Part shown: piece by piece, positions 17,201 through 33,493 of the stretch
How the letters are laid out: the number at the start of each line of letters is the position of its first letter
Numbering within the stretch: the stretch's first letter is position 1
IMG/VR virus record: IMGVR_UViG_3300046665_000548
Span: 310,001-374,000 of that record
DNA: 64,000 nt
Strand: one strand, 5' to 3'
Notes under the pieces: model-generated
The model's database searches: none
What the model saw: only the letters and a program-made list of their open reading frames with translations
Told to the model about the DNA's origin: nothing
Translations under genes and position numbers: made by a program

Positions 17201-20200
17201 ACATCTGCTGGCTCACATTACTGGCTTTCAATTGAAGTATCTGGCGATGGATCAACTATCATCGCTGGTGATGCTGATACAGGTGGCCGTGTATATGTAT
17301 CACACAACTCAGGTACGACGTTCACTGCTGTTGCAGGCTCGCATCCATGGCTTGGAGTTGCTTCATCATCTACCGGCTCTGTACTATATGCAGTCGGGGA
17401 TACGGGCAACTACGTTCAGAAATCGACAAATGGTGGTACGAGTTGGTCTTCACTGACAGCAGGACCAACCGGCTGGAATGGCGTCGATTGCTCTAGCGAC
17501 GGTCAGACAGTCGTTATCATCGGGTCAGGTAATGCGGCTAAGGTATCGACAAATGGCGGTACCTCGTGGGCTGATTGCCCAACTAGCGGTTCATTCAATA
17601 ACTGGAGCAACATCAGTGTATCCGACACTGGCCAATATATCGTACTTGCTGATAATACCGACTATATCTGGTTCTCTAGCAATTACGGTACTTCGTTTGT
17701 CAAGCAGAATCAGCCAGGATTCGGTCAACGTATTTGGATATCTGTGGACATCTCTTCAGATGGACAGTGGATCATTGCTGGCGAGTATGATGATGGTAGT
17801 GGCAAGGGCCAGATATATGTAATCAACTACTCTCGTCCCGTCTACGCATCTGGTTCTGGCACATCTAGCGGTATTGGCACAGCGGCTGCCGTTGGTAAAC
17901 CAATGTCGATTGGTCCGGCAGTTGTCTATGGCGCGACACTTGCCACCAACGATACGAACGTTAATATGTCGTTTCGCGTTGTTGCTACAGTTGTTGAAGC
18001 ATCAGATGGGCATCTTCGCATAACTTTTCAGTCTGGTTCAGGAGGTACCCTCGGTATTTCTCATGCCTCATTTGGCAAGTGGGATACTAATACTGGCTCA
18101 GCGGATACAACGGGAACACCTATCAAACTGACGTTTGGCGGGGCTGATACGTTCCAGATGAGCGGAACGGTTACCTCTGATTACGTCAATCACTCAGCAT
18201 CGTTCTCGCTCGTTCCTGGCGAAAAGATCGTCGTCATTTACGATACCACTTCATTTGGCGATGAACGCTATAGTGGTTCACTATCGGGTGTTGAAACGTG
18301 GTTCAAGGTTGGTACTTCATGGAGTACCCCGAACGTAACCGGATTCACAAAGCTTGCAGCGACCAACTATTCCGTTATAGCAATTGAATCAGTTAAGAGC
18401 TTTGAAATTCTACCATACGCTGGACCTACAGTTCGTTCAGTATCTAACACTGCGTATGTTAGTACGAGCAGCTTAGTTCTTAACAAGCCTACGGGAACCG
18501 TAGATGGCGATATTATGATCGCTCATACGTTTTCTGGCGTTGATTTCTATAACGACGGAACGTTCACTGCACCAGCAGGATGGACGTTGCTGACTGGTTT
18601 TCCGACAGCGGTAGACGTAAGTAACTTCTACGGTAAAATGTTTGTGTACTGGAAGCGAGCTTCTAGTGAAGGAAGCTCATACACCTTTACACAGAATAGA
18701 GACTTTTATACTCAGGGTGAAATCATCACGATCCAGGGCGCTGTTGCATCTGGTGATCCGATTGATGTTATCGGAATAGCTACAGGTCTTAGCCAGACAA
18801 GTGTCGTTAGCTCGGTCACCACTTCTGCTGATAACGAACTCGTATTGTATTTGTCGCACGACTGGGAAGGTAATGGAGCATTATCTCCTCCCGCTGGCTT
18901 TACTGAGATTTTAGACGGTCTTATCTATTCAGCATCTCGCCAACTTTCATACGCTTCAGCAACGGGTTCCGTAGCACAAGTTAACGGTAATCTCGGCGCA
19001 GGTGCTCCATTCGCCGCGTCTCTAATCGCGATTGAACCAGCCATCGCCAGTGTATCTGCTAACATCACCGTATCAGGCATCGTTGCCAACAGCGCGGTGG
19101 GCTCTCCGACACAAATCGGAATCAGTTATACCGCTGTCTCTGGAGTTACGGCTGGAACAGCGATTTCGGCACCGACAACGCAAGGCACGGCTAATAAGAG
19201 CATAACTGGCGTCTCTGCTGCCACACAAATTGGCACGGTTTCGACTATCGGCAGCGCTAACAAGGCACTGTCTGGTGTTTCGGCATCGAGCGCTGTCGGC
19301 GTTGCCACTGACAGGACGACAAGCAACGTAGCAGTTTCGGGCGTAGCAGGATCGTCTGTAATAAGCAGCGTGACTACTATTGGCCGCGCAGTTGTCTCTG
19401 CTTCTGGTGTGCAGGCATCAACGGCGGTCGGGATTGTCGCTAAAATTGGCAATGCAAACATCCTTGCGCCATCTACGACCGGTACGGGTCAGGTGGGAGG
19501 AACAGTTAATTCTGGCACGTCAAATGTAGCGCTGTCCGGAGTAAGCGCCGCATCGGCAATTGGCACGACAACAAACATTGGAAATGGAAACGTCCTTGCG
19601 ACCTCGGCGTCCGGCTCCGCTGATGTTGGAGTCGCTACCGGGGTTGGGACGACCACAGCTAGCATTGTAATTTCAGGAGTTTCTGGAACAGCAACTGCAA
19701 ACGCTGCTACAATTGGCTCAACGAACAACATTTCACTGTCGGGTGCTTCCGCAGCGACCTCCGTTGGAAGCACCACTGAGAGTGGTTCTAACAACGTCAA
19801 TATCTCCAGCACGACCGCATCAACCTTCGTCGGTTCTCCAAATGTGGGCGGGCAATCGGCTGCGGTAAGTGGGGGCGTTTCGGCGTCAACGTCATCTGGC
19901 ACGACATCCATCTCCAGCAGCGCTAATGTGCCTATTTCTGGGGCTAACGCGGCCGGTGCGGTTGGATCGCCTACGAAAATCGGATCGGCAAATGTTGCGA
20001 TTACATCAGTATCCGCCAGTGGTCAGGCCCAAACGCTTACCGGTATCGGTTCGGTTCAAATCGCCGCTACTGGTGTTCAAGGCGCAACAAGTAGTGGATC
20101 GCCAACTGTTTCGGGTGAAGCGTTTGTAGCGATTTCCGGTGCCTCGGCTAGCGTTGTTGCACAATCAAATACGGTAACGACGACTGCATCTGCGACGGTG

Positions 20201-22702
20201 ATCGGTGTTGTCGCCGGAACGTCTGCGGGCACAACTAACAAGACGACCACTTCCTTTACATCCGTCAACGGCGTCACGGCATCCATAAACGCAGGACAGC
20301 CTGCCAATATCGGCAACGCTTCGGCGGCAATCGTGGGCGTCTCTGGTAGCAGCGCGGCTTCGCCAGTCATAGTTGCCTCAGCGATCAATACCGGAGCGTC
20401 TGTCGTCGGTGTTAGTGGCACCGGAAGTACGGGCGCGACCACCGTCAGCACACAATCATCTGCTTCTATCGCGGGTATTCAAGGAAATGGTGTAGCTGGG
20501 TCTCCTAATGCGACTGGCTTTGCTATCACGCCTGTCGTCGGCGTATCCTCCAGTGCAGTCAGTGGTACTACTACTGAGAGCGGATCAGCTAACGTTCAAA
20601 TCACGGGAGCCTCGGCTAATGCTCTTTCAGGAGCGCTTACCGAGACAGGTTCTAGCTATGTCAATCTGACTGGTGTTTCGGCATCCGGCGTCAGCAGAAC
20701 AACAAGCGTTACGGGATCATCGAGCATTGGCATCACTGGTGTCCAAACAAGCTCTTCGGTTGGAACCACAACAGAGACATTTTCCGCCAACGTATCGCTC
20801 ACGAGCGCGAGCGCACAGGGTCTTGTTGGAACTACGGAACAAGCCGCAGGAACTGTTTTCAGACTCGAAGATGGCGTTGTAGCAAATGGTCAGGCTGGAT
20901 TGCCATCCGTCATTGGTCACGGAACGATTACTATCAACGGTGCATCTGCTACCGCGTATACCGGCACAACAGGAGAAATTACGGCGTCTTCGGCATCGGT
21001 CGCGGGCGTTGCAACGACTGGTATCGCTGGTTCTGTCGGTATCGTCGGCCGAGCCGTCGTTGATCTTCAGGGCGCAAGCGCAACTGCCCAAACTAGCAAC
21101 GCTCCAGTCAGCGTCACGTCATTCACTTCGATCTCGGGTGAGAGCGCAACTGCCCAGATCGGTATTGTTACTATCGGAAATATCGGAATTACGCTTGTCG
21201 ATCCACAGGGGGTAAACGCCTCGGGTAATGTTGGCGTGACGATTCCTTCCATCACGTCTAGCACGAATATTTCCGGCACAAGTGCTTCGACCCAGGTAGG
21301 AATCACAGATCAAAAGGTTTATGCCAACGTATCTCTATTGGGTACGTCAGCATCGTCGTCCGTTGGAAACGTGATCCCAGCGATACAGACCACTCTAACG
21401 GGCGTTTCATCCTCTGGTCAGGTTGGAACTTCTACTGTATCGAGTTCGTCCGCCGCATCGATCCTTGGTGTTCAGAGCGCTGGCGCGGTTCGTCCAATCA
21501 CTGGGGTTGGTAGCTTCAACACTACGATCTCTGGAGTCGAAGCAAACGGCTCGACAAATGATCTAGTCGTTCTCAGTACGGCGAATAGCACCATTGTCGG
21601 GGCCAGCGCCGCAGGTCTTGTTACTGGCCCGACCGTCACCGGCAACGCAGCTACAAACGTCTCTGGGGTCTCCGCAGCAGCTTCGGCGGGCATTGCAGCG
21701 TCTCGCGCCAACACATCGGTGGTAGCGGATGGCGTCCAGGCCACAGTTATTGCCGGTTCGCCTATAGAAAACGGCGATGCGAACGTACTGGCATTGGGAG
21801 TAGCCGCGAACTCACTCGTTGGTAATTCAGATGTAAATGGCGACACGTGGGTTTCGCTCACAGGTATCTCGGCTTCTGGCCAGATCAATTCAACCTCGGT
21901 TCGGGCCGATGCGGATAGCATCATTTCTGGCGTAAGTGGTTCCGGTCAAGTATCTGACGCGACCATTAATTCCGCAACGTACGCTGATATATTTGGAGTA
22001 TCCGCACAGACTGATACGGAAAACCTCACCGCAAGGCGAGACGCCATCGCGGTTCCCATCCAGGGCGTAGCGGGTGGCGGCACTGTTTCAAACGTATCAC
22101 CGGCTATCGCCAAGCTGGTTTCTGGTGTCGTGGCGACGGGTGTTGCAGATGCCGTCTACGCAGGACGAACCAGCAATAGTTCGATTGGCAACTTTGGCTC
22201 ATCCGCTGCTGGAAAGTCCAATACCCGCCCCGGTATGCACCGGTATGTTCAAAATGCCAGACCATATTATGACCATCTGAAGCCTCGTTTGCCGCGCTAT
22301 CGCATTCCGGCATCGCAGATGGTCGTGATGGAGTTTGTCGTTCCGACAGGCGGAAAAACCAAGCTGTTTCTGGTTCACACCGGCAAGGCACAGGACTATT
22401 CCGCTCAGGCATGGATCAGCGCGGAACCAGACGGGCGGCCGGTAACGTCAACGACCAATATGAGCGAAAAATGGTTTCCTAACCGGCGTGCGATCAATCC
22501 TGTCATAGTTTTTGATCAAGCCATTTCGACCCCTCATGGATTGACTGTCGGACTGCCCCCAGGACGCTATTTTCTCAATATTCTCAACGTCTCCAACGAA
22601 CCAAATGAGGTTGGTTTTTGGTTAGAAACTGGTATTGTGGTTCTTAGCGGGGCATCAGCCGGAACCGCCGTAGGACAGACATTTCAGTTGACCATTTCGT
22701 AA
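14261..22702 (+). CDS. Giant multidomain fibre/adhesin (2813 aa): 3 SPRY/ConA-like domains, BNR-repeat beta-propeller, 22-aa-repeat stalk, shared C-terminal domain
   Basis: Three copies of FD..K..G.TLSN.D.T...TGKYSF...DPVAGTGG...PTSLPSG..W; Asp-box-like S.(D/N).G.(S/T)W repeats; (S/T)GV.A....G every 22 aa from about 19050 to 22190. Confidence 0.85.
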   Translation: MTTFDSTRKDSGITLSNGDLTASSVTDAPLYVFGTTGKSTGKFSFTVSTPNGFDNNTFRLYLSNLPSSGAAPAAGYLEIYRSGSVWVINDTNGTNNNFGGNAPSSNPDILTVHVDITARKVYFSLNGGAYFNSADPVAGTGGFSIPGTGDIYPAARLSASISVNVTINFFPTSLPSGFSSWDAPSIQSADGTSSGTGAASGVGVALTGTRFDPLKTETGLTLSNNDLTVSGTGGAGNYTWSTTAKTTGKYSFEITSSYFYTSDLVIYLDQQSGASAQPGQFTDAGVRLTYLDPIIPGWGWNARDTSSTNFFDTSHPITNGSTNTVRVHVDFTARKIYYEVNGSLLYGADPVAGTGGISMTTVGTHKLCMAVSIQAHPSSATVNFNPTSLPSGYTGWDYVHNYQSGVGTAAGVGTATGNGTAVILSRSTFDSVKTDAGLVLSNGNRTVAGPGNLGSLYTWSTTSKSTGKYSFAFTSNNFYSSDVRIWIDAQVGTNLPNQNANGGVRLIYIDPSAGGQGWGVVSTVPANTYDGLHAISANTSYTIRVHADFTADRVYFELNGSYLFGGDPVAGTGGIVMSPAAVQKICIMVDAVGPNPTGGSIDFAPTSLPSGFTAWDETLGTSAGTSTASAVGAVAPRGDAAGTSTVSGVGVAYRPTLKFSAANSATATTVSIPTHEVGDLIVIYAMRENATPPTLASGFTSITTNTTTLFGSILGYRIATATNTTSGTWTNAQELIVHVYKPRTGGAIRIGSSVVAVGTSTTLSWSALTPQRTNSTSWIAAFGGHRSINTTLESPPTGMVLRNNLVDSLAEVASFDTNGAVNSFALSTKTPGGTASGWGTIVVEIQDLAQIMQGSASGAGSATAVGNAVGIITGVGNATGNSTVTASPNISRRVTSFPGTNPASFNGVATNSDGSIMYAAPYNDCILKSVNYGVTWTQLAGTSNFWQGVATSHSGQVVAAMVPGGSIWVSTDYGASWTEATSAGSHYWLSIEVSGDGSTIIAGDADTGGRVYVSHNSGTTFTAVAGSHPWLGVASSSTGSVLYAVGDTGNYVQKSTNGGTSWSSLTAGPTGWNGVDCSSDGQTVVIIGSGNAAKVSTNGGTSWADCPTSGSFNNWSNISVSDTGQYIVLADNTDYIWFSSNYGTSFVKQNQPGFGQRIWISVDISSDGQWIIAGEYDDGSGKGQIYVINYSRPVYASGSGTSSGIGTAAAVGKPMSIGPAVVYGATLATNDTNVNMSFRVVATVVEASDGHLRITFQSGSGGTLGISHASFGKWDTNTGSADTTGTPIKLTFGGADTFQMSGTVTSDYVNHSASFSLVPGEKIVVIYDTTSFGDERYSGSLSGVETWFKVGTSWSTPNVTGFTKLAATNYSVIAIESVKSFEILPYAGPTVRSVSNTAYVSTSSLVLNKPTGTVDGDIMIAHTFSGVDFYNDGTFTAPAGWTLLTGFPTAVDVSNFYGKMFVYWKRASSEGSSYTFTQNRDFYTQGEIITIQGAVASGDPIDVIGIATGLSQTSVVSSVTTSADNELVLYLSHDWEGNGALSPPAGFTEILDGLIYSASRQLSYASATGSVAQVNGNLGAGAPFAASLIAIEPAIASVSANITVSGIVANSAVGSPTQIGISYTAVSGVTAGTAISAPTTQGTANKSITGVSAATQIGTVSTIGSANKALSGVSASSAVGVATDRTTSNVAVSGVAGSSVISSVTTIGRAVVSASGVQASTAVGIVAKIGNANILAPSTTGTGQVGGTVNSGTSNVALSGVSAASAIGTTTNIGNGNVLATSASGSADVGVATGVGTTTASIVISGVSGTATANAATIGSTNNISLSGASAATSVGSTTESGSNNVNISSTTASTFVGSPNVGGQSAAVSGGVSASTSSGTTSISSSANVPISGANAAGAVGSPTKIGSANVAITSVSASGQAQTLTGIGSVQIAATGVQGATSSGSPTVSGEAFVAISGASASVVAQSNTVTTTASATVIGVVAGTSAGTTNKTTTSFTSVNGVTASINAGQPANIGNASAAIVGVSGSSAASPVIVASAINTGASVVGVSGTGSTGATTVSTQSSASIAGIQGNGVAGSPNATGFAITPVVGVSSSAVSGTTTESGSANVQITGASANALSGALTETGSSYVNLTGVSASGVSRTTSVTGSSSIGITGVQTSSSVGTTTETFSANVSLTSASAQGLVGTTEQAAGTVFRLEDGVVANGQAGLPSVIGHGTITINGASATAYTGTTGEITASSASVAGVATTGIAGSVGIVGRAVVDLQGASATAQTSNAPVSVTSFTSISGESATAQIGIVTIGNIGITLVDPQGVNASGNVGVTIPSITSSTNISGTSASTQVGITDQKVYANVSLLGTSASSSVGNVIPAIQTTLTGVSSSGQVGTSTVSSSSAASILGVQSAGAVRPITGVGSFNTTISGVEANGSTNDLVVLSTANSTIVGASAAGLVTGPTVTGNAATNVSGVSAAASAGIAASRANTSVVADGVQATVIAGSPIENGDANVLALGVAANSLVGNSDVNGDTWVSLTGISASGQINSTSVRADADSIISGVSGSGQVSDATINSATYADIFGVSAQTDTENLTARRDAIAVPIQGVAGGGTVSNVSPAIAKLVSGVVATGVADAVYAGRTSNSSIGNFGSSAAGKSNTRPGMHRYVQNARPYYDHLKPRLPRYRIPASQMVVMEFVVPTGGKTKLFLVHTGKAQDYSAQAWISAEPDGRPVTSTTNMSEKWFPNRRAINPVIVFDQAISTPHGLTVGLPPGRYFLNILNVSNEPNEVGFWLETGIVVLSGASAGTAVGQTFQLTIS

Positions 22703-22741
22703 ATCGGGGTTATTTCTGATTCGCAGTTGGGAGATTTCAGA

Positions 22742-24256
22742 ATGGCAATTTACGCCAAGCGCGACGGAACCAGTTTGATCGTCGGCGCGGCCGATACTTT
22801 GGTCGAAATGGAAGACCTTTTTACCAGGACTTCCGGCGTTGCCGGGGTGCGGTTGGCTCGTCCAAGTTCAACCGACATGATGATGGACGAACGCTTCCAG
22901 AACATGACCACCATTCCAGGTGTGTACGAATTCGACGGACGCTCCGAGCAGGATGCGTTCGCGGAACAGTATTCTATTACCATCGTCGGACCAAACAAGC
23001 TCGCTGACCGTCATTCCGATATGATGGAAAAGCTGGAAGAGGACCCGTACTTTCTCCCGTCCGAAGACGAAGATGATCCGGACCGCGTGAAGCGCACCAT
23101 CGGTGAACTGCATGGCATCAATGCAGAAGACCCGTGGGACAAGCGCAGCGACGAAGACAAGGAAAAGGACGAAGAATACAAGAAGAAATACGAGGCGGCG
23201 AAGAAGGCTGGCAAGCTTTCCGGCGACGATTCGTTCGCGCCTCCCGGTTCTACTACCCGTGTTACCGACATCGAGACGACCCGCAATGCTGATGGGACGA
23301 TTTCCATCGACAAGGTGCTCGCGAGCAAGGGTACTTACGAGGACAATGACAAGGACCGCAAGGACGCTGAAAAGCGCGTTCGCGGCGGTGCTCCGGCTGC
23401 TGGCACCCCGGCTGAGAAGGCATCGGGTCGTAGCATCGAGGATATCATCGGCGGCGTGTTGAACCCGCAGGCGGCACCTGAACCGGAGCCCGATCCGGTA
23501 CACGGCAATATGTCGATCCAGGATTTGATGGAACAGATGGCTAATTCGGCTCCACGTGAGCCGTTGGTCGATGACAATGGGATCGATATGACGATCTCGG
23601 AGTCGGACGATATTGCGATGTTCTACAAGCTTGAGTTCGTCGGCGCACATGTCTCTGATCTCGAAGCCGTGCTTGGCACCAACGAGGTTTGGGAGACCGT
23701 TCACGAGAAGCGCGACACTGGCGACGATTGCTGGTTTGCGTTCGTGCGTCACAAGCAGGGTTTGGCTTTCGAGAACGCTGCGACCGACGCTGGCTTCAAG
23801 ATCGCGGAGCATCCATACGGCGTGAAGCCGGATGGTGATCGGCTGGTCGAGAAAAGCGTCAAGGGCGTCACGGTCGTTGACACGGGCGAGAAGCGCGAAA
23901 TTGGTCCGCGTCCGTGGAATGCCCGTGCGGCCGAACTGGAAGCGATGACGGAAGAGGAACGCGCCGAAGAGTGGAAGAACTGCAAGGGCGACGAGTTCAT
24001 CTTCTCTGGCACGTACGAGGGCGCGGCAGCAGGCACCATCGTCTACATCACGCCAAAGTCCTACTTTGAAGAACACGGCGTCATGTTCGATCAGCCGTTG
24101 AACATCGATCATCTGATCGAGCGCGACTTGAAGGAAATCACTCCGGGAGGCGTCTACCGGACCATGAGCCGCGACTGGAATTCTCTCAGCTTTGCCCTGT
24201 CCAAAAAGGGGATGGTCGAGAATATGTACCTGCAACTCTATCTCAACACGCTGTAA
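22742..24256 (+). CDS. Acidic hypothetical protein
   Basis: Long ORF with strong codon bias; GGGAG RBS before ATG 22742. Confidence 0.8.
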   Translation: MAIYAKRDGTSLIVGAADTLVEMEDLFTRTSGVAGVRLARPSSTDMMMDERFQNMTTIPGVYEFDGRSEQDAFAEQYSITIVGPNKLADRHSDMMEKLEEDPYFLPSEDEDDPDRVKRTIGELHGINAEDPWDKRSDEDKEKDEEYKKKYEAAKKAGKLSGDDSFAPPGSTTRVTDIETTRNADGTISIDKVLASKGTYEDNDKDRKDAEKRVRGGAPAAGTPAEKASGRSIEDIIGGVLNPQAAPEPEPDPVHGNMSIQDLMEQMANSAPREPLVDDNGIDMTISESDDIAMFYKLEFVGAHVSDLEAVLGTNEVWETVHEKRDTGDDCWFAFVRHKQGLAFENAATDAGFKIAEHPYGVKPDGDRLVEKSVKGVTVVDTGEKREIGPRPWNARAAELEAMTEEERAEEWKNCKGDEFIFSGTYEGAAAGTIVYITPKSYFEEHGVMFDQPLNIDHLIERDLKEITPGGVYRTMSRDWNSLSFALSKKGMVENMYLQLYLNTL

Positions 24257-24486: not shown

Positions 24487-24517
24487 TCTTTCTATCCTTT
24501 TAGGTCCTTAGTTTTTG

Positions 24518-24544
24518 GGCGGGGCTTTGGTCCCGCCTTTTTTT
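24518..24544 (+). terminator. Rho-independent terminator
   Basis: GGCGGGGC-TTTG-GTCCCGCC followed by T7. Confidence 0.75.
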
Positions 24545-24560
24545 CTGGTATTTTACCAAA

Positions 24561-25109
24561 ATGCTGAGTGAATTCCTTGAAGACGCGCTTCCCAAGAAGG
24601 AAGCAGCCAAGAAATCAGTCTGTTGTGACTCCCGCTCAATGATGGTGGTGGGTGGCGGCGTAATTGTGCTCAAAAAGCAGTATGATCCAAACCAGCATTG
24701 GTTCGAGTTCATGCAAGGAGTTATTTTTGAGCCGCTGCATCAACTCCCACGACCAAAGCCCGAGTACGCTCGAAAGCCTAAGGTTACCAAGTTCGCTCGC
24801 CAAATGCCGGGCGATTATAAGCTGTTCCATTATATCAAGGGGCGCAATCAGCTATGTTTGCCATTCCCGGATCGCTTGAAGCTCAGCGCGAACCAAATGC
24901 AATCTGTCGCCAATGCGGAATTTCCGACCTGGGACAAAAATTCCGATAATGATGTCCCAGCCGTAAAATACACAAGGGAACGCAAAACCGACGTGGAAGA
25001 ATGGTGCCTAGCAAACTGCAAAGGTTTCTACGGCATCAAAAACGGTGAGGTTCGTTTCCAGTACAGCCGTGAATACATTCTAGCCAGGATGATGTTCGGT
25101 GATTCTTGA
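24561..25109 (+). CDS. Hypothetical protein, divergent 'FKLRWG' family member
   Basis: C-terminal VEEWCLANCKG...VRFQYSREYILARMMFG. Confidence 0.6.
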   Translation: MLSEFLEDALPKKEAAKKSVCCDSRSMMVVGGGVIVLKKQYDPNQHWFEFMQGVIFEPLHQLPRPKPEYARKPKVTKFARQMPGDYKLFHYIKGRNQLCLPFPDRLKLSANQMQSVANAEFPTWDKNSDNDVPAVKYTRERKTDVEEWCLANCKGFYGIKNGEVRFQYSREYILARMMFGDS

Positions 25110-25431
25110 ACCCAAATTGTCCACAGAAGAAGGACGACAGTTCGAAGCAATTCGTCAGTTGTTCATCGCTCAGGGCGAGAAAGAATTCGTAGAGCAGATC
25201 GCCAGCTACCCATTCGTGGTGGCTGGAAGCTATCCGGAATTCGAGGATGATCAGAAGGGTTGCTTCGCCTATATCGGGAAGGCAGAGGACTGGCTTAAGG
25301 AAAATATAGCGGAAGGTGATTATCTCGCGTTTCCCGGCATGGCTATCGGGCAGTATGCTCGCTGTTGTCGCAACGTGTATTTCAAACACGAGCGCGATGC
25401 TATCCACTTCAAACTCGGATGTAGCTACTGA
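25099..25431 (+). CDS. Hypothetical protein, 'FKLRWG' family
   Basis: WLKENI...YFKHERDAIHFKL. Confidence 0.65.
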   Translation: MILEPKLSTEEGRQFEAIRQLFIAQGEKEFVEQIASYPFVVAGSYPEFEDDQKGCFAYIGKAEDWLKENIAEGDYLAFPGMAIGQYARCCRNVYFKHERDAIHFKLGCSY

Positions 25432-25757
25432 TGTTGATTCAGTCGTACGATACCATGTATGGGCCGGAGCAGCGAGGCAATCGCTGGCTCGTGAATCAAC
25501 GATATTATCGCTATCGCGTCGAGACGGATACGATATTTGAGGACAATGAGCAGTGGCGGAAAGAAATAGACGCCCGTGAAGAATGGGCCGAACAACAATT
25601 GTCTCATACTAGACGCCGAAATAAAGGCAAGCTCATCAACAGCGTGTATGACGAGTCTGATTGGTCCATCTTGGTGGACTACGAAGCCATATGGCACCTC
25701 TGGTGGTATTTCATGAACGAGAATGATGCGCTGCTCTACAAGCTTCGTTGGGGCTAG
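25431..25757 (+). CDS. Hypothetical protein, 'FKLRWG' family
   Basis: Ends YFMNENDALLYKLRWG. Confidence 0.7.
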   Translation: MLIQSYDTMYGPEQRGNRWLVNQRYYRYRVETDTIFEDNEQWRKEIDAREEWAEQQLSHTRRRNKGKLINSVYDESDWSILVDYEAIWHLWWYFMNENDALLYKLRWG

Positions 25758-26398
25758 CTGAGAACGAAGGCGTCGATAGCATCAATGGCCTCTTCAATGC
25801 TTATTTCAAACCATTCTCCCGTTCCTCGCCGGTTGCCAAATTGGAGATGCAGCTTAGCTTCTACTTGTTTTCTCAAAGGAAAAAACTTGTAGTGGTTATA
25901 TTCGAATGAAGCGTGCGGATCACCGGTTTGATAACCTGCCAGTCTAGATTGTAAATCAGTTGTCGATCCGATCTTTACCCATCCAGGAAAAGCTGGATTA
26001 GTCATCACATAGACAAAACCTTTCTCGTTGCGCGTGATACCAAACGCCGGACCTTTATTCTCGACGGCGATTTCCTGCCGTAACCGCAATTGCTTGCTTT
26101 GTTGCTTACGTGAATATGCTTTCTCCCGAGCAGCGGGGCGCTGCTCTCTCTCGATTTGTCGCTGGTTTTTGCGTTCAGCATTTGCGTTCTCTGTTGCAAA
26201 TGCTCTATCGAACTTCCTACTCTGCGCCGCTAACACAAATGCATTGCGCGATCTAAAGTAAATTCCGATATAGGTTCGCAAATCTGCGAACTCGATGAGT
26301 TGTAATCCTCTTGCAACTCTACATTCGTTCAGAACGTCACACGCCGACCTCAAAGAAGCATCGGACGGCTCACGTGACGAAGTTTCTAAAAAATTCAC
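25754..26398 (-). CDS. GIY-YIG superfamily (T5orf172-like) nuclease-domain protein
   Basis: GFVYVMTNPAFPGWVKIGST..L..RL..YQTGDP...E..LH......GEWF. Confidence 0.8.
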   Translation of the reverse strand: MNFLETSSREPSDASLRSACDVLNECRVARGLQLIEFADLRTYIGIYFRSRNAFVLAAQSRKFDRAFATENANAERKNQRQIEREQRPAAREKAYSRKQQSKQLRLRQEIAVENKGPAFGITRNEKGFVYVMTNPAFPGWVKIGSTTDLQSRLAGYQTGDPHASFEYNHYKFFPLRKQVEAKLHLQFGNRRGTGEWFEISIEEAIDAIDAFVLS

Positions 26399-26417
26399 GC
26401 TAGGGCTCGTTTTTTAT

Positions 26418-26446
26418 TTGCATTGGTGCGAACTGGTATGTATGTT
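26418..26446 (+). promoter_or_regulatory. Candidate sigma70 promoter of the large ncRNA
   Basis: TTGCAT-N17-TATGTT at the start of the ~1-kb non-coding region. Confidence 0.4.
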
Positions 26447-26452
26447 GACCAT

Positions 26453-27440
26453 AGTTTGGAACGATAAGCCGGGCAACCGGTGAATTGGGGTAAACCCCAC
26501 ATAACCCCTACCCAGTGTCTAGTATGGTTCGCCCAGCTAGATGATGGACAGCCCAAACAACCCCGCATCTTCACATCTCATGCTGGATGTGAGCTTCTGA
26601 GCCGACCTACACAGGAAGGACAGGAGATGTGGCTGAACGGTAGGATTAGGTCTGGAGGCATCCAGAAGAGAATGCAGCCTCTGCGAAAGCATGGCGGTTC
26701 TAACAATGGCGTCGCAGTCATTGACCTGAATGCGAACCTACAAGAAGCCTATGAGTGAACGGGAAGTCGGGTTTGTTCGAGGCTTAGCGGCTAAGGGCGA
26801 CCGGCAGTTCGATGGGTTGTGTCTCTAGGAATAGAGGCGTGATCCGAGGGTGTTGATGAAAGTCATGCCCGTGAACGCCCAAGTAGTGCTAGCAGCATGA
26901 AAAGGATGAGGCGTGTTGTATTTTGATTCTCGAAAGAGAGTTGAAGCAGCAGGGACAGCACGTCTTGGTGGTTTCGCATAGCTCAGTAGTAGAGCAACAC
27001 CCAATCCAGGTGTCGGTCTCTGGTTGCGATACCAGATACGATAAACAAAAAGCGAAAGTCTGTCCCGGCTGTATGTGAAAGATGTCTAATGCCGAGCCCT
27101 GGCAAGGGAACTCGGTCTCCCGGAGGTCGCAAGCCGAAGGTGAGTTGATAGAGAAGGTTTCATAACGAGGTAGCCCTCGTGAACGGCTCGCAAGGTCGGT
27201 GGAGCAAGAACTGTTGAGTGACATGCAGCGACACGAGAACTGCCTCTCGTGCTGTTGGTCCGATGAAGCCGAACCTCGCAAGGGTTTGGTGGAGTACCAA
27301 CGAGCAAGAATGGCGACATTGGCTGGATACCTGTCGAGGGCGCAAGCTCCGGTGGGTGGATAACCGGGGAAAGCTGGCCGCAAGTCAGTCATAATCCCGA
27401 AAGACCGGTCGTGAAAACGAGTAATCTCATCGTTTCGAAA
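26453..27440 (+). ncRNA. Large ornate ncRNA, GOLLD-like
   Basis: No credible CDS over ~1 kb; many GNRA-capped hairpins (GCAA, GAAA, GTAA); embedded tRNA-like domain; GCGTGTTGTATT and 3' GAGTAATCTCA segments resemble GOLLD RNA from memory; ends at a terminator. Boundaries approximate. Confidence 0.7.
26972..27044 (+). pseudogene. Degenerate tRNA-like domain inside the large ncRNA
   Basis: TA-GCTC-AGTAGTA-GAGC D arm; ACACC/GGTGT stem with loop CAATCCA (no U33); TCTGG/CCAGA stem with 8-nt loop TTGCGATA; two acceptor-stem mismatches; no CCA. Confidence 0.65.
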
Positions 27441-27443
27441 AAA

Positions 27444-27470
27444 CCCTCGCGAAAGCGGGGGATTTTTTTT
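27444..27470 (+). terminator. Terminator of the large ncRNA
   Basis: CCCTCGC-GAAA-GCGGGGG followed by A and T8. Confidence 0.8.
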
Positions 27471-27483
27471 AGGAATTACACCA

Positions 27484-27726
27484 ATGGATGCTTTGGAATT
27501 ATTTTGTCATCGCGTGTGGATCACCGTAGGCAATACTGACGAGCTTCATTCATGGCTCGTGGAGAACATGGGCGAACCGTTTTATCGCGATCAAGATGAA
27601 GACTTGATGGTCGGTAAGAGATGGTCGATCATGACGCCTATCTGGGGTTGCCGGAACATCGCTAACTTGCGAGTGCATTTTGCGGATCAACGAGACGCGA
27701 TGCTGTTCAAGTTGAGATGGGGCTGA
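27484..27726 (+). CDS. 'FKLRWG' family protein (tandem duplicate 1)
   Basis: LHSWLVENMGEPFYR...LRVHFADQRDAMLFKLRWG. Confidence 0.75.
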   Translation: MDALELFCHRVWITVGNTDELHSWLVENMGEPFYRDQDEDLMVGKRWSIMTPIWGCRNIANLRVHFADQRDAMLFKLRWG

Positions 27727-27732
27727 CCCCAA

Positions 27733-27981
27733 ATGGATTACATAAACCATTCAAAACAATTTCCTTACTACGTATGGACGAGAACATACGACATAGACGG
27801 CTTGCATTCTTGGCTGATCGACAACTTAGGCGAGCCGTTCTATCGCGAGAGTGATTCGGTCGCATTGATGGTTGATAAAAGATGGTCAATTCTATCTCCT
27901 ATCGGTCGCAACATTGCAGCACTGCGTGTTCATTTCGCAGATGCTAATGATGCTCTCCTCTTTAAGTTGAGATGGGGCTGA
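27733..27981 (+). CDS. 'FKLRWG' family protein (tandem duplicate 2)
   Basis: LHSWLIDNLGEPFYR...LRVHFADANDALLFKLRWG; 3' end GTTGAGATGGGGCTGAC identical to the previous gene. Confidence 0.75.
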   Translation: MDYINHSKQFPYYVWTRTYDIDGLHSWLIDNLGEPFYRESDSVALMVDKRWSILSPIGRNIAALRVHFADANDALLFKLRWG

Positions 27982-28049
27982 CATCTATAAAAGACCTCGT
28001 ACGAGCGAGGTCTTTATGCTATGCGAGTGGATCATCATCAGAGGCAATC

Positions 28050-28196
28050 ATGTATCGTCGCAAACTTCTTCTTGAAGCCATCGATACCCAGGACGGGCGG
28101 CGGATATACTCCGTTGATGTCGGTGATCTTCCATTTGAAAAAGCCAAACAGTACATCGATCAGATAATCAGGACGAAAAATGTCTCTGACCAATAA
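28050..28196 (+). CDS. 48-aa protein resembling the portal (gp20) stem/clip segment
   Basis: GAGG RBS; MYRRKLLLEAI...RRIYSVDVGDLPFEKAKQYIDQI aligns with the window's portal YKQKELLEDAI...RRIFYIDVGNMPPVRAKAHIQAI. Confidence 0.6.
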   Translation: MYRRKLLLEAIDTQDGRRIYSVDVGDLPFEKAKQYIDQIIRTKNVSDQ

Positions 28197-28386
28197 CCAG
28201 AAGAGCATAGTCGCTCTCATGAAGCGCAGCACCATTCAAGCAGATGGATGGTATCGCGTAAGCGATATGATGTGGCCGGTGATTTCCGGCAAGCTACCCG
28301 ACGAACTAGTTGATGAGCGTAAAAACGATGACGGTGGATTTATTCGATTCACCGCCCAAGGAGAAATCGTAGCAAAGTATCTTTAA
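28180..28386 (+). CDS. Hypothetical protein
   Basis: AGGA RBS; coupled ORF. Confidence 0.6.
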   Translation: MSLTNNQKSIVALMKRSTIQADGWYRVSDMMWPVISGKLPDELVDERKNDDGGFIRFTAQGEIVAKYL

Positions 28387-28393
28387 CGGCGCG

Positions 28394-28690
28394 ATGAAAA
28401 ATGGGAGAGGCTTAATGATCATCAAAAATCGACCCGATTGGTGGAGACTTGCTTCGAAGACTGTTCCTCATCTGAAGAGATTTGGCGCTCAGAATGGAGT
28501 GTATTTCGATGAATCTGCGGCGATTGGATGTTTGAACCCCGCCGCAGATCGCGATCTCCATAAGTTGCTCTGCGATTTCTTGCGAGAGTTGCCCCACAAT
28601 CAGCTAGAGAAGACGTTCCCGTTCGATGATCTCTGTGATCTGTGCTCCGAACATGATCGCGTTTTCCAGACGGAGATGGAGCCGGGTTAA
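28394..28690 (+). CDS. Hypothetical protein
   Basis: ORF in a packed co-directional run; start may be the second Met. Confidence 0.55.
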   Translation: MKNGRGLMIIKNRPDWWRLASKTVPHLKRFGAQNGVYFDESAAIGCLNPAADRDLHKLLCDFLRELPHNQLEKTFPFDDLCDLCSEHDRVFQTEMEPG

Positions 28691-28692
28691 GC

Positions 28693-28887
28693 ATGGCAGG
28701 CGAAGTAATCTACGTTGATTTTTCGAAGAATGGTCTCAGCTTCGAAGATCGGATGTCTATTGCCCTGCACGAGTGGATAGCGTCCCATCCGTACGGGGTT
28801 TCGCCTGAAGACATGAAAGCTGAGATTGCCCGGCTAATGAAAAACCCTGGCTCATCGAGCCGACCAACAGGAGATACGAATGAATAG
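28693..28887 (+). CDS. Hypothetical protein
   Basis: Coupled ORF starting MAGEVIYVDF. Confidence 0.55.
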   Translation: MAGEVIYVDFSKNGLSFEDRMSIALHEWIASHPYGVSPEDMKAEIARLMKNPGSSSRPTGDTNE

Positions 28888-29167
28888 ACGCGAGCTATTA
28901 GGTGCAGCACTGACGACCGGGGCAGCAACAGTAATCGGTGTGAGCGCAGCGAATGCGGCGTCGTCCGTAGAGCCGGATGGCTGGATGATGCGCAGCAAGG
29001 ACTATTGCAAGATCATTCCGGACGGCGAGCTAGAGCGTTGGAAATTCAATTGGAAATATCTACTGTTGGATGGACGAGCAGAGATCGTTCCTTTGTACAA
29101 GGGCGACGCTGTGCCGAGAGAGCAGCTAACATTTGCTTCATTGGAGGAAATGAATAGGATGCTTTAG
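28880..29167 (+). CDS. Small protein with twin-arginine (Tat)-like signal peptide
   Basis: MNRRELLGAALTTGAATVIGVSAANAA; AGGAG RBS. Confidence 0.65.
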   Translation: MNRRELLGAALTTGAATVIGVSAANAASSVEPDGWMMRSKDYCKIIPDGELERWKFNWKYLLLDGRAEIVPLYKGDAVPREQLTFASLEEMNRML

Positions 29168-29276
29168 AATATTGACCAATCTGATTTGGATCAGTATTCT
29201 TCTCATACAACTTGAAAAGCCTCGCTCCGGGATGCCGGTGTCGGGGCTTTTTTGCGTTTTTAAAAGGAGAAATTAG

Positions 29277-29747
29277 TTGTCGCAGAAAGTAAAATGCAAG
29301 GCTCGTGCAAATCATATCGAGTACACACCAAAGAACCAGTACAGCGATGCTCGTCATCAGATTCGAATGAATGCTGTATGGGCGGGATCGAACGAAGCAC
29401 AAGAGGCTTCAGAGAACGGGATTTTCGGAAGAAACACTCCGCAATTCGATCTCAGCATGACCATCCTGAATGAGGCAGCCGCTAAACTGTTCGTCCCGAA
29501 CGCTGAGTATTACGTAACGTTCGAGCTAGCCAATCCGGTCACGGCAGAACAGATCACTCAGGTGGAAGAAACCGTTGCTCGTCTAGAGGAGACGATTTCC
29601 GACAGGCGGGCCAAATTCGAGCAAGCAAAGAAGGATGGCGATGATCGTGCCCTGGCCGATGCTGCGCATGATCTCAAGATTTACTCGAACAACCTGTCTG
29701 ATACGGCCTATGCTCTGACTCAAATGAGAGCACAGTTCAACGGCTAA
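29277..29747 (+). CDS. Hypothetical protein with coiled-coil C-terminus
   Basis: AAGGAG RBS before TTG start. Confidence 0.7.
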   Translation: MSQKVKCKARANHIEYTPKNQYSDARHQIRMNAVWAGSNEAQEASENGIFGRNTPQFDLSMTILNEAAAKLFVPNAEYYVTFELANPVTAEQITQVEETVARLEETISDRRAKFEQAKKDGDDRALADAAHDLKIYSNNLSDTAYALTQMRAQFNG

Positions 29748-31697: not shown

Positions 31698-32897
31698 ATG
31701 CGTGATTTCATCGACGGCGTTGCTTTGAGCAAAGCTTTTCAAGGTATTCTATTCCATGGTTCTCCCAACCATAAGCTGATCATTGACCACGAGAACGGCT
31801 CGCTATTCACGACGTTCGATGATGCGTGCAACTATGGTCCGAACGTCTTTGAATGCCGTGTAAACCTGCGCCGCCCATACACGCTGACCTCAGCCGATAA
31901 TCCACATGACCTAATGAATAGCCTTGGAAACGAAGGCTACGACGGTTGTATTATGGACCAGGATGGCGTTCGGAAGATTATCGTATTCGACGCCAAGTCG
32001 ATCACGTTCATTAAGCATCATGACGCCGCGTGTGATCTCGATGAAATGGACATTGAACAGAACGTTATCCTGAAAGAGTTTCGTCCAGGAGCCGGACAAC
32101 ACGTCTTGATGATCACCGGCAAGCTCGCCAAAGCCGGACTTGATCGCGTCATGAAGGCCCTAGGTACGGAAGACTTCACTTATGAAATCCGAAACCTAGA
32201 TATTGCAGTTGCAGCCTGGATCACGACGGACCTGATCAAAAATTCAATCGAAGACCTGGAAGGGGTCGATCTGATCCTGATTCCAGGCAAAGCCACGGGC
32301 GACGAAGAGCAGCTTGCGAAAGACCTTGGGGTAAAGGTCATGCGCGGTCCGGTCTGCTACAGCGAGCTTCCTGTGTTCTTCGAACACCACGGTGTTGAGA
32401 TCGATCCTGAAGGCATCATCCGGCCCAAGATCATCGTTCTGGGTGATGAGGCTGAGTACGCCGAAGCACTGAGCAAAACATACGAAGTACCGCACCTCAC
32501 GATTCACGAGATGCTAGACAGCCTCGGGAAGGAAGATGATCTTGTTCTGAAGATCAGCGAATTCATCTCGGATGGTGCGCCCGTCCCGCATTACCTGATG
32601 GCAGAACTCGTACGCAGTCGCCTTGTCATGCAGGATGTTCAGAAAGGCTACGTGCTGGACGGCTATCCCCACACGCCGCGTGACGCTATCTGGATGGATG
32701 ACATTAAACCGCAGCCGGACGTGATTGTTTCAATGGGATCGGCAGACCCTGAGGTGGTTGAGCACTATACGGGGAACCCGGCGCTCGTAGAGGTCGATTC
32801 ATCGGACCCAGAACGCACAATGTCGCTCCTCTACACGGGCGTCGAGATGTTGATGAGACAGTGCGTAAAGCCGGGAATGGCTAATACGAAAAAATAG
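31698..32897 (+). CDS. Fusion: ART-like domain + DUF6513-like domain + degenerate adenylate-kinase-like domain
   Basis: FHGS...YGPNVFECRVNLRRP...GYDG; ITGKLA..GL.RV...VAA.IT...LIPG...GD...LGV.V.RGP....LP.FF; GYVLDGYP with no P-loop. TAAATA 4 nt upstream. Confidence 0.65.
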   Translation: MRDFIDGVALSKAFQGILFHGSPNHKLIIDHENGSLFTTFDDACNYGPNVFECRVNLRRPYTLTSADNPHDLMNSLGNEGYDGCIMDQDGVRKIIVFDAKSITFIKHHDAACDLDEMDIEQNVILKEFRPGAGQHVLMITGKLAKAGLDRVMKALGTEDFTYEIRNLDIAVAAWITTDLIKNSIEDLEGVDLILIPGKATGDEEQLAKDLGVKVMRGPVCYSELPVFFEHHGVEIDPEGIIRPKIIVLGDEAEYAEALSKTYEVPHLTIHEMLDSLGKEDDLVLKISEFISDGAPVPHYLMAELVRSRLVMQDVQKGYVLDGYPHTPRDAIWMDDIKPQPDVIVSMGSADPEVVEHYTGNPALVEVDSSDPERTMSLLYTGVEMLMRQCVKPGMANTKK

Positions 32898-33309: not shown

Positions 33310-33393
33310 TGGCCGGTGCCCGGAATGGTATCGGAGCAGATTGTTAATCTGTCGAGGGAAACCTCATTGCAGGTTCGAGTCCTGCCCGGTCAG
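33310..33393 (+). tRNA. Non-canonical tRNA with GTT (Asn) anticodon and long variable arm
   Basis: Acceptor TGGCCGG/CCGGTCA, G73; D stem CCG/CGG; anticodon arm GCAGA-TTGTTAA-TCTGT; variable arm GAGG-GAAA-CCTC; T arm GCAGG-TTCGAGT-CCTGC; followed by CCT, not CCA. Confidence 0.8.
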
Positions 33394-33418
33394 CCTGACG
33401 ATCAAAGCGTAGTAGTAT

Positions 33419-33493
33419 TCCTGGGTAGCTCAGCGGCAGAGCGTTCGACTGTTAATCGAATGGTCGCAGGTTCGATCCCTGCCCCAGGAGCCA
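33419..33493 (+). tRNA. tRNA-Asn(GTT)
   Basis: Canonical cloverleaf TCCTGGG/CCCAGGA, TTCGA-CTGTTAA-TCGAA, U1-A72, G73, encoded CCA. Confidence 0.95.

What the first reader, a model, noticed from the sequence alone, without database searches (positions are those of the whole stretch)
26453..27470. ~1-kb GOLLD-like RNA as a stand-alone transcription unit
Seen: an ORF-poor kilobase between a candidate promoter and a strong terminator, with many GNRA hairpins (e.g. CCCTG-GCAA-GGG, GGCTC-GCAA-GGTC, AACCTC-GCAA-GGGTT, CTGGCC-GCAA-GTCAG, TTCTC-GAAA-GAGAG). Established: GOLLD RNAs are phage-associated, tRNA-linked, of unknown function, and some form RNA-only cages. This copy appears long, and its 5' half may contain new domains. 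The family call is from memory.
Basis: partly seen in the sequence, partly recalled or inferred. Interest (0 to 1): 0.6.

Follow-up and report, generated by a model that had tools for sequence, protein, structure and literature searches.

The report
GOLLD RNA gene in huge phage
This kilobase is a genuine GOLLD RNA gene, one of the giant phage RNAs known to self-assemble into protein-free cages. It sits as its own transcription unit in a 608-kb phage, so it is a long new member of a known family, not a new kind of element.

Summary
Rfam's GOLLD model (RF02032) matches window 26908-27433 (+) end to end at 188.3 bits (cut-off 150). This conserved 3' domain is preceded by a ~455-nt 5' domain (26453-26907) and followed by a strong intrinsic terminator (27444-27470).

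The 5' half is not a new domain. It is collinear with the 5' domains of at least 30 non-redundant relatives, including Caulobacter phiCbK-type phages, Sinorhizobium phage Phosso and a 578-kb phage. In that alignment, 42 of 49 predicted pairs show compensatory changes. The window copy differs only by local hairpin expansions. At about 1,016 nt it is among the longest of its subclass.

Contigs from four soil and rhizosphere metatranscriptome runs (two studies) lie only inside 26463-27421, with nothing in 2 kb on either side. This fits an abundant stand-alone RNA.

The linker, which faces the cage interior in solved GOLLDs, holds a decayed tRNA-shaped element (26972-27043). Most relatives carry a recognisable tRNA there. 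tRNAs and pseudo-tRNAs inside GOLLD are already published.

Cage assembly and function are inferred by homology only.

Verdict: real, correctly named, a new member of a known kind, of modest interest.

The parts
26418..26446 (+). Promoter-like site: TTGCAT, 17 nt, TATGTT. The predicted start is near 26453.
   Evidence: Read from the sequence. It matches 7-8 of 12 consensus positions and was not listed by the consensus scan. Relatives have sigma-70-like sites at the same relative place: L004 12/12, L029 and L045 11/12, L020 10/12, Phosso 9/12. Inferred, not shown.
26453..27468 (+). Whole predicted GOLLD transcript, about 1,016 nt.
   Evidence: Rfam match, homologous 5' domain, terminator. Metatranscriptome contigs lie only within 26463-27421. 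Exact ends are not determined.
26453..26907 (+). Variable 5' domain, of the type shared by a subclass of GOLLDs.
   Evidence: Aligned with 29 non-redundant relatives at 55-64% identity (A2). RNAalifold gives 49 pairs, 42 of them with compensatory changes. 89.7% of cells are paired, against 66.7% in column shuffles and about 40% when partners are slid. A sequence profile built without the window matches 26695-26906 at 61.5 bits. Fold z-score is -2.16 on the + strand and +0.52 on the minus strand.
26468..26481 (+). Conserved hairpin GCCGG-GCAA-CCGGT.
   Evidence: Covarying helix at A2 columns 121-135. Listed as a GNRA hairpin.
26511..26547 (+). Expanded hairpin. Most relatives have about 10 nt here; L022 and L053 are also enlarged.
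   Evidence: A2 columns 167-225. The single-sequence fold shows an extended hairpin.
26766..26805 (+). Signature hairpin of the subclass. It contains the near-invariant 24-nt motif at 26775-26798.
   Evidence: Invariant columns in A2, with flanking and inner pairs that covary. The motif retrieved 8 viral and 62 metagenome loci. About 35 of the metagenome loci, and all but one of the viral ones, carry a 5' domain followed by a GOLLD 3' domain.
26813..26846 (+). Long GGAA-capped hairpin. It overlaps a window-specific 26-nt insertion (26827-26852).
   Evidence: The profile alignment shows the insertion. The hairpin has a 15-pair stem.
26908..27433 (+). Conserved GOLLD 3' domain.
   Evidence: RF02032, 188.3 bits, cut-off 150, model positions 1-416.
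26908..26966 (+). First hairpin of the 3' domain, with a GAAA loop. It precedes the linker.
   Evidence: Rfam alignment, model positions 1-64.
26972..27043 (+). tRNA-shaped relic in the linker: D arm 26981-26995, anticodon arm 26997-27013 with loop CAATCCA, T arm 27019-27036 with an 8-nt loop.
   Evidence: Aligns with the linker tRNAs of relatives. Pairs kept: D 4/4, anticodon 5/5, T 5/5, acceptor 5/7. U33, purine 37, the D-loop GG and the T-loop TTC are all lost. Not called by ARAGORN. No Rfam tRNA hit at E<=10. It folds alone into three arms.
27066..27076 (+). 5' strand of the long-range helix that Rfam marks as a pseudoknot.
   Evidence: Rfam alignment, model positions about 127-136. Coordinates.
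27221..27230 (+). 3' strand of the same long-range helix.
   Evidence: Rfam alignment, model positions about 289-298. Coordinates.
27250..27308 (+). 59-nt expansion of a variable hairpin in the 3' domain, itself capped by a GCAA loop.
   Evidence: Rfam alignment shows 59 inserted bases where the model has 3. It is the longest among 10 aligned relatives. It is present in RNA-library contigs with no joint.
27444..27470 (+). Intrinsic terminator: 7-pair stem, GAAA loop, T8.
   Evidence: Phosso has an equivalent terminator at the aligned place.
25754..26398 (-). Divergent upstream neighbour, a T5orf172/MUG113-domain protein (context, not part of the RNA).
   Evidence: Pfam PF10544 at 1.6e-15 and PF13455 at 2.1e-11. 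PHROG 5032.
27484..27981 (+). Two tandem paralogous small ORFs downstream (80 and 82 aa, 63% identical). Context only.
   Evidence: No family match.

Best explanation
Window 26453-27468 (+) is the gene for a GOLLD RNA of a 608-kb phage. It is transcribed on its own, from a weak sigma-70-like promoter to an intrinsic terminator, as a stable non-coding RNA of about 1.0 kb.

The RNA has the family's two-part build:
- A variable 5' domain of about 455 nt, of a type shared with Caulobacter phiCbK-type phages, Sinorhizobium phage Phosso and many soil and freshwater viral contigs.
- A conserved 3' domain of 526 nt.
- Inside the 3' domain, a linker after its first hairpin that here carries a decayed tRNA-shaped element.

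By homology with the solved GOLLDs (12-mer and 14-mer cages), the RNA most likely self-assembles without protein into a dihedral nanocage. In that cage the 3' domains form the equatorial rings, the 5' domains form the caps, and the linker with its tRNA-like passenger points into the lumen.

What is shown: family membership, domain homology, covariation, the terminator, and the presence of the RNA in RNA libraries.

What is inferred: the exact 5' end, cage assembly and its stoichiometry, and the timing of expression.

The biological role is unknown for the whole family. My working guess is a tRNA-related role during lytic growth that depends on tRNA shape, not decoding, because the helices are kept here while the loop signatures are lost.

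Sub-claim probabilities: GOLLD member 0.98, own transcription unit 0.85, forms a cage 0.65, tRNA-shape-dependent role 0.3.
For: - Family: RF02032 at 188.3 bits against a cut-off of 150, full model length. It is the only GOLLD in the 607,744-bp virus record.
- Relatives: blastn finds Phosso and 18 phiCbK-type phage records, each with an Rfam GOLLD at the matching place.
- 5' domain: it aligns with relatives. 42 of 49 consensus pairs have compensatory changes. 89.7% of cells are paired against 66.7% in shuffles, with 355 compensatory cells against 112 +/- 9.
- Strand: fold z-score -2.16 on + and +0.52 on minus. GNRA hairpins number 8 on + and 0 on minus.
- Transcription unit: terminator, divergent upstream gene, and strong sigma-70-type promoters in relatives.
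- RNA libraries: in four metatranscriptome runs from two studies, contigs lie only within 26463-27421 of the 5,001 bases laid. Three contigs of one run are identical to the window. Contigs run straight across the tRNA-like element and the 59-nt insertion.
- Published basis for the cage: env-38 is a 14-mer, Sag GOLLD a 12-mer, the linker faces inward, and the 5' domain sets the stoichiometry (PMC12286853, PMC12990946).
Against: - No experiment on this RNA exists.
- Contigs cannot show ends, strand or abundance. Two of the four runs are flagged as possibly DNA.
- The promoter match is weak (7-8 of 12) and the tool's scan did not list it.
- The first ~240 nt of the 5' domain are too diverged for a sequence profile. 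Their placement on the consensus structure rests on collinearity seen by eye in A2.
- The subclass's signature 5' hairpin turned up in only 1 of 34 other GOLLD loci with enough upstream sequence. Its 5' cap may therefore not assemble as in the solved examples.
- I could not map the window's insertions onto the published helix numbering, or onto the intermolecular contacts.
Confidence: 0.85

Rival explanations
1. The transcript is a tRNA carrier or precursor. The linker element would be cut out by RNase P and a 3' nuclease and would serve in translation, with GOLLD as its storage form. This is the 'inhibited storage' idea published for a mycobacterial GOLLD with an embedded tRNA-Phe.
For: ARAGORN calls a tRNA in 27 of 40 linkers of the subclass. 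All seven GOLLD-bearing viral relatives and Phosso have an Rfam tRNA hit inside the linker. The idea is published (PMC12990946, PMC12286853).
Against: In this copy the element fails ARAGORN and has no Rfam tRNA hit at E<=10. It lacks U33, purine 37, the D-loop GG and the T-loop TTC, has an 8-nt T loop and an acceptor stem of 5/7 pairs. RNA-library contigs run uninterrupted across it. Across the subclass only 18 of 33 elements keep both U33 and purine 37.
Confidence: 0.05
2. It is a decaying, no longer functional GOLLD copy that is still transcribed.
For: Degenerate linker tRNA, several insertions, a weak promoter, and a first 240 nt that a sequence profile does not recognise.
Against: The full model length is matched above the curated cut-off. 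The helices that align reliably are kept through compensatory changes. The insertions are themselves well-formed capped hairpins. The identical sequence is assembled from small RNA libraries in which the flanking genes are not.
Confidence: 0.07
3. It is a long structured 5' leader that regulates the downstream small ORFs (27484 onward), not an independent RNA.
For: Same strand as the downstream ORFs. Only 15 nt separate the terminator's T run from the next start codon.
Against: A strong terminator with T8 lies between them. Contigs stop at 27421 and none covers 27422-29500. The flanking genes differ in every relative, so the RNA is not coupled to a particular downstream gene.
Confidence: 0.03
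4. The region encodes a protein, the 167-aa ORF on the minus strand at 26889-27392.
For: The ORF exists.
Against: No Pfam or PHROG match. Open frames at this place range from 71 to 290 codons in relatives. The covariance model, covariation and hairpin asymmetry all favour an RNA on the + strand.
Confidence: 0.01

Closest known systems
GOLLD RNA family (Rfam RF02032; Weinberg et al. 2009; solved env-38 14-mer, PDB 9MEE, and Streptococcus agalactiae 12-mer, PDB 9L0R, as cited in PMC12286853 and PMC12990946)
   Same: The full 3' domain is matched above the curated cut-off. It has the same two-part build with a variable 5' domain and a linker after the first 3'-domain hairpin. It is phage-encoded and rich in GNRA-capped helices.
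   Different: About 1,016 nt against 833 and 700 nt for the solved RNAs. The signature hairpin of its 5'-domain type turned up in only 1 of 34 other viral GOLLD loci sampled. It has a 59-nt expansion in a 3'-domain hairpin. It is not inside a tRNA array. Oligomeric state is untested.
GOLLD genes of Caulobacter phage phiCbK and its relatives, and of Sinorhizobium phage Phosso (unannotated in the GenBank records seen)
   Same: They are the closest sequence relatives among isolated phages (69-72% identity over the start of the 3' domain). They share the 5' domain type, the signature hairpin, the position of the linker element and the terminator. All are jumbo phages. phiCbK also has a permuted tmRNA gene, as does this genome.
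   Different: Both carry an Rfam-recognisable tRNA in the linker: Gly-TCC or Lys in the phiCbK group, and Arg-TCT (read by eye) in Phosso. The window carries only a relic. The flanking genes are unrelated. The window copy is 40-60 nt longer.
Mycobacterial GOLLD with an internal pseudo-tRNA (Behra et al. 2019, PMC6582537; Morgado et al. 2020, cited in PMC12990946)
   Same: A tRNA-like or pseudo-tRNA element lies inside the GOLLD gene. GOLLD RNA was detected by northern blot, while no separate pseudo-tRNA product was seen.
   Different: Those copies lie within large tRNA arrays of bacterial chromosomes or prophages. This one lies in a 608-kb virus record, 5.9 kb from the nearest tRNA gene.
ROOL RNA (phage and prophage RNA that forms 6- or 8-mer cages)
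   Same: A likely functional analogue: a large phage-borne RNA-only cage with a disordered inward-facing linker.
   Different: Unrelated sequence and fold. No ROOL match was reported anywhere in the window.

Membership tests
GOLLD RNA (RF02032) | Match to the curated covariance model of the conserved 3' domain at or above the gathering score | tested here: met
   188.3 bits against 150, E 1.9e-51, window 26908-27433 (+).
GOLLD RNA (RF02032) | All model elements present, including the long-range (pseudoknot-marked) helix and the terminal hairpin with the conserved loop | tested here: met
   Model positions 1-416 aligned without truncation. One non-standard pair in the 10-pair long-range helix.
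GOLLD RNA (RF02032) | Bipartite build: a structured but less conserved 5' domain of about 400 nt upstream of the 3' domain | tested here: met
   455 nt, homologous to the 5' domains of 29 relatives, with covariation above two controls.
GOLLD RNA (RF02032) | Variable linker after the first 3'-domain hairpin, sometimes holding a tRNA | tested here: met
   The linker at 26967-27062 holds a tRNA-shaped relic at 26972-27043.
GOLLD RNA (RF02032) | Encoded by a phage or prophage | tested here: met
   The window is part of a 607,744-bp IMG/VR virus record, rated 100% complete by CheckV.
GOLLD RNA (RF02032) | Located near or within tRNA gene clusters (frequent, not obligatory) | tested here: inconclusive
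   The nearest tRNA genes are two tRNA-Asn 5.9 kb downstream. The genome's 57 tRNA genes mostly cluster elsewhere.
GOLLD RNA (RF02032) | Exists as an RNA product | tested here: met
   Contigs of four metatranscriptome runs (two studies) cover 26463-27421 only, partly at 100% identity. Caveat: contigs do not prove transcription, and two of the runs are flagged as possibly DNA.
GOLLD RNA (RF02032) | Protein-free assembly into a dihedral 10- to 14-mer cage | not testable with these tools
   Known only from cryo-EM of other members (PMC12286853, PMC12990946).
GOLLD RNA (RF02032) | Expression rising during phage-induced lysis | not testable with these tools
   No infection time course exists for this uncultured phage.
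tRNA (for the linker element 26972-27043) | Match to the Rfam tRNA model RF00005 (cut-off 29 bits), or a call by ARAGORN | tested here: not met
   No tRNA match at E<=10 in a 101-nt search. Not called by ARAGORN.
tRNA (for the linker element 26972-27043) | Cloverleaf helices | tested here: met
   D 4/4, anticodon 5/5, T 5/5, acceptor 5/7 pairs. Three arms appear in the minimum-energy fold.
tRNA (for the linker element 26972-27043) | Near-universal loop residues: U33, purine 37, G18-G19, T54-psi55-C56 in a 7-nt T loop | tested here: not met
   Anticodon loop CAATCCA, D loop AGTAGTA, T loop TTGCGATA of 8 nt.

The most novel reading that the evidence does not exclude
This copy and its subclass, found in Caulobacter and Sinorhizobium phages and in uncultured soil and freshwater viral contigs, may build a cage of a different size or symmetry from the solved 12- and 14-mers. 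Three points support this. Its 5' cap domain is of another type. The RNA is 180-300 nt longer. And in solved GOLLDs the 5' domain and hairpin branches set the stoichiometry.

In addition, the linker tRNA may be selected for its shape, not for decoding. Its helices are kept while the anticodon loop drifts or decays. That would point to a role as a caged tRNA mimic, for example a decoy or trap for tRNA-binding host factors.
Probability: 0.2. Interest if true: 0.6.

Novelty: new member of a known kind. Interest (0 to 1): 0.3.

Why it matters
GOLLD is one of very few natural RNAs known to form protein-free cages, and its function is still unknown. This copy adds little to the concept but gives useful material.

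- It is a long variant from a 608-kb soil phage with direct signs of abundance in soil and rhizosphere RNA libraries.
- It belongs to a well-populated subclass (at least 30 diverse sequences here) whose 5' domain structure is supported by covariation.
- That subclass includes cultivable phage-host pairs (phiCbK with Caulobacter, Phosso with Sinorhizobium) in which a knockout could finally test function.
- The subclass is also a natural experiment on the embedded tRNA. Some members keep a canonical tRNA and others, like this one, keep only the shape.

Tried and rejected
1. The consensus promoter scan found nothing upstream. The promoter call rests on a 7-8/12 match and on analogy with relatives.
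2. A sequence profile of the relatives' 5' domains matches only 26695-26906. MAFFT misregisters the window in the central helices of A2, so the window's letters at columns 318-335 and 463-477 do not pair. I did not assign those helices in the window.
3. A tentative 5'-terminal helix, GTTTGG 26454-26459 with CCAAAC 26553-26558, would replace the relatives' long-range helix (A2 columns 92-96 with 231-235). It is not in the minimum-energy fold and stays a guess.
4. Rfam at permissive thresholds found no other family in 26300-27500, only chance-level hits on the terminator, and no tRNA in the linker.
5. Pfam and PHROG searches on the two internal ORFs and on most neighbours gave nothing.
6. There is no synteny between the window's flanks and those of 19 relatives, apart from one 56-aa match of the 509-aa ORF at 22727-24256, well upstream of the RNA.
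7. Of 48 other viral GOLLD loci fetched by a 3'-domain pattern, the 5'-domain profile matched one in full, three in part and five over a short stretch. The signature hairpin turned up in only 1 of the 34 with enough upstream sequence. The 5' domain therefore could not be linked to the family at large by sequence.
8. I could not map the window's insertions onto the published P1-P27 numbering or onto the intermolecular bridges. No tool here holds the sequences of the solved RNAs, and I did not type any in.
The stretch given to read laying was 5,001 bases.

Full report
**What is there.**
An Rfam scan of the whole window gives one strong non-tRNA match. It is GOLLD (RF02032) at 26908-27433 on the + strand: 188.3 bits against a gathering score of 150, E 1.9e-51, all 416 model positions aligned. 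The result was repeated on the sub-region and on the whole genome.

The window is bases 310001-374000 of a 607,744-bp IMG/VR virus record, rated 100% complete by CheckV, and this is its only GOLLD. The Rfam model covers only the family's conserved 3' domain.

**Check of the observation.**
I counted hairpins with at least four contiguous pairs closing a GNRA loop. The + strand of the region has 8. Dinucleotide shuffles give 1.0 +/- 1.0, other tiles of the window give 0.8 on average, and the minus strand has 0.

The 5' part folds better than its shuffles on the + strand only (z -2.16 against +0.52). The region is not strictly free of ORFs: there are 92 aa on + and 167 aa on minus. These have no Pfam or PHROG match, and no frame of constant size is kept in relatives.

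**The 5' half.**
blastn against isolated phages finds Sinorhizobium phage Phosso (469 kb) and 18 records of phiCbK-type Caulobacter phages. Both of the records fetched, Phosso and phiCbK, have an Rfam GOLLD at the matching place. Their upstream ~450 nt align with the window's.

A near-invariant 24-nt motif in this 5' part (window 26775-26798) was used as a search pattern. It retrieved 8 viral and 62 metagenome loci. About 35 of the metagenome loci, and all but one of the viral ones, carry the 5' domain directly followed by a GOLLD 3' domain. One of them is a 578-kb phage with terminal repeats.

Thirty non-redundant 5' domains, 55-64% identical to the window, were aligned (A2).

- RNAalifold predicts 49 pairs, and 42 of them show double compensatory changes.
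- In my own control, 89.7% of cells are paired. The figure is 66.7% (max 68.9%) in 500 column shuffles and about 40% when partners are slid by 1-3 columns.
- There are 355 compensatory cells against 112 +/- 9 in the shuffles.

So the 5' half is a conserved, structured domain.

It is not a new domain. The window is collinear with its relatives and differs by enlarged hairpins: 26511-26547, and a 26-nt insertion at 26827-26852 within a long GGAA-capped stem. The first ~240 nt are too diverged for a sequence-only profile. I placed them by collinearity in A2 only.

This 5'-domain type defines a subclass. I fetched 48 other viral GOLLD loci through a 3'-domain pattern. The 5'-domain profile matched only nine of them, one in full, and the signature hairpin turned up in just 1 of the 34 with enough upstream sequence. 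That agrees with the published statement that GOLLD 5' regions are less conserved (PMC12286853).

**Length.**
The RNA is 981 nt to the end of the Rfam match and about 1,016 nt to the terminator. That puts it at the top of its subclass, which spans 857-988 nt. It exceeds the solved env-38 (833 nt) and S. agalactiae (700 nt) RNAs (PMC12990946). Part of the excess is a 59-nt expansion (27250-27308) of a variable 3'-domain hairpin.

**Transcription unit.**
The upstream gene (25754-26398) is on the minus strand and encodes a T5orf172/MUG113-domain protein. A + strand transcript therefore needs its own promoter within 26399-26452. The best candidate is TTGCAT-17-TATGTT (26418-26446). It is weak by consensus (7-8/12) and the scan missed it.

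Relatives have sigma-70-type sites at the same relative position, up to 12/12 (L004), 11/12 (L029, L045) and 10/12 (L020). Phosso also shares the terminator position. The flanking genes are unrelated in 19 relatives, so the RNA gene behaves as a self-contained module.

**Signs of the RNA itself.**
A word search of public runs listed 20 runs that hold at least part of the stretch, 10 of them on record as RNA libraries, from 13 studies. I laid the four best on window 24500-29500. They are rhizosphere and soil metatranscriptomes from two studies.

All contig pieces fall within 26463-27421, and none falls in the 2 kb on either side. Three contigs of one run are identical to the window (26482-26725, 26858-27214, 27185-27408), and one contig of another run covers 26908-27403 with a single difference. 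Small RNA libraries that assemble this kilobase of a 608-kb phage, but none of its neighbours, fit an abundant stable RNA.

The contigs also run uninterrupted across the linker element and the 59-nt insertion, and no joints were reported.

Caveats stated by the tool:
- Contigs show neither ends, nor strand, nor level.
- Holes prove nothing.
- Two of the runs may contain DNA.

**The linker element.**
In solved GOLLDs the linker after the first 3'-domain hairpin is disordered and faces the cage interior, and tRNAs are sometimes found there (PMC12286853, PMC12990946). In this subclass a tRNA-shaped element is always present at that spot.

- Rfam finds a tRNA inside the linker of all seven GOLLD-bearing viral relatives and of Phosso.
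- ARAGORN calls one in 27 of 40 linkers. Lys is the commonest, and there are several odd anticodons (TCA, ATG, TAT, ATC) and malformed loops.
- Only 18 of 33 elements keep both U33 and a purine at position 37.

The window's element (26972-27043) keeps the D, anticodon and T helices in full and 5 of 7 acceptor pairs. It has lost U33, purine 37, the D-loop GG and the T-loop TTC, and its T loop has 8 nt. It is not called by ARAGORN and has no Rfam tRNA hit even at E<=10 in a 101-nt search. On its own it folds into three arms.

It is therefore a tRNA relic or mimic, not a decoding tRNA. A pseudo-tRNA inside a GOLLD gene has already been reported in Mycobacterium (PMC6582537), so this is not new in kind.

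**How it most likely works.**
*Shown:* a GOLLD-family RNA gene with both domains under structural constraint, with its own terminator, and present in RNA libraries.

*Inferred from homology:* the transcript self-assembles without protein into a dihedral cage. The 3' domains form the rings, the 5' domains form the caps, and the tRNA-like linker sits inside.

*Open:* the stoichiometry. In solved members it depends on the 5' domain and on hairpin branches (10-, 12- and 14-mers; PMC12990946), and this copy has another 5'-domain type and extra arms.

The function of the family is unknown. Because the helices of the linker element are kept while its decoding signatures decay, I favour a role that uses tRNA shape, not tRNA function (probability about 0.3).

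**Comparison and novelty.**
Every testable defining feature of GOLLD is met, apart from the non-obligatory link to tRNA clusters. The nearest tRNA genes are 5.9 kb away, and most of the genome's 57 tRNA genes cluster elsewhere. This is a new, long member of a known family, belonging to a subclass that includes cultivable jumbo phages. It is of modest interest in itself. Its value lies in providing material for structural and genetic tests.

Noticed in passing
window 14261-22702 (+): A 2,813-aa open reading frame with no Pfam family, only a faint BNR repeat hit below the cut-off. It is a giant protein of unknown role in this huge phage.
   Followed up: partly
window 33310-33395 and 33419-33493 (+): Two adjacent tRNA-Asn(GTT) genes. 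The first is 86 nt, unusually long for tRNA-Asn, and scores lower in Rfam (46 against 70 bits).
   Followed up: no
window 25754-26398 (-): A T5orf172/MUG113-domain protein sits directly beside the GOLLD gene, transcribed divergently. Mycobacterial GOLLD clusters are reported next to an HNH endonuclease (PMC6582537).
   Followed up: partly
window 27484-27726 and 27733-27981 (+): Tandem paralogous small ORFs (80 and 82 aa, 63% identical), both ending in RWG. No family match and no copy elsewhere in the window.
   Followed up: partly
window 31698-32897 (+): A 399-aa protein that joins DUF6513 to an adenylate-kinase-like domain.
   Followed up: no
G000:C1 576377-576796 (outside the window): ARAGORN finds a permuted (two-piece) tmRNA gene with tag ANDNVAVSEYALAA. 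phiCbK-type phages carry a permuted tmRNA right beside their GOLLD. As far as I recall, permuted tmRNAs are typical of Alphaproteobacteria, which would hint at the host.
   Followed up: partly
G000:C1 4091-4178 and 4180-4256 (outside the window): Two adjacent tRNA genes with anticodon CTA (amber-reading) among the phage's 57 tRNA genes. I did not examine whether TAG is recoded anywhere in the genome.
   Followed up: no
G000:C1 ends: The first 60 bases recur at position 607598. The record therefore has a terminal overlap of about 147 bp although it is classed as 'linear'.
   Followed up: partly
L013 1501-1991 (-), from a 578-kb phage with terminal repeats: Its GOLLD scores 129.6 bits, below Rfam's cut-off of 150, although both domains are clearly present. 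Routine Rfam annotation would miss it.
   Followed up: partly
L008 3059-3082, and about 27 metagenome loci: These loci have exact matches to the 24-nt 5'-domain motif without a detectable GOLLD 3' domain. They may be chance matches, fragments or another RNA that uses the same hairpin.
   Followed up: no
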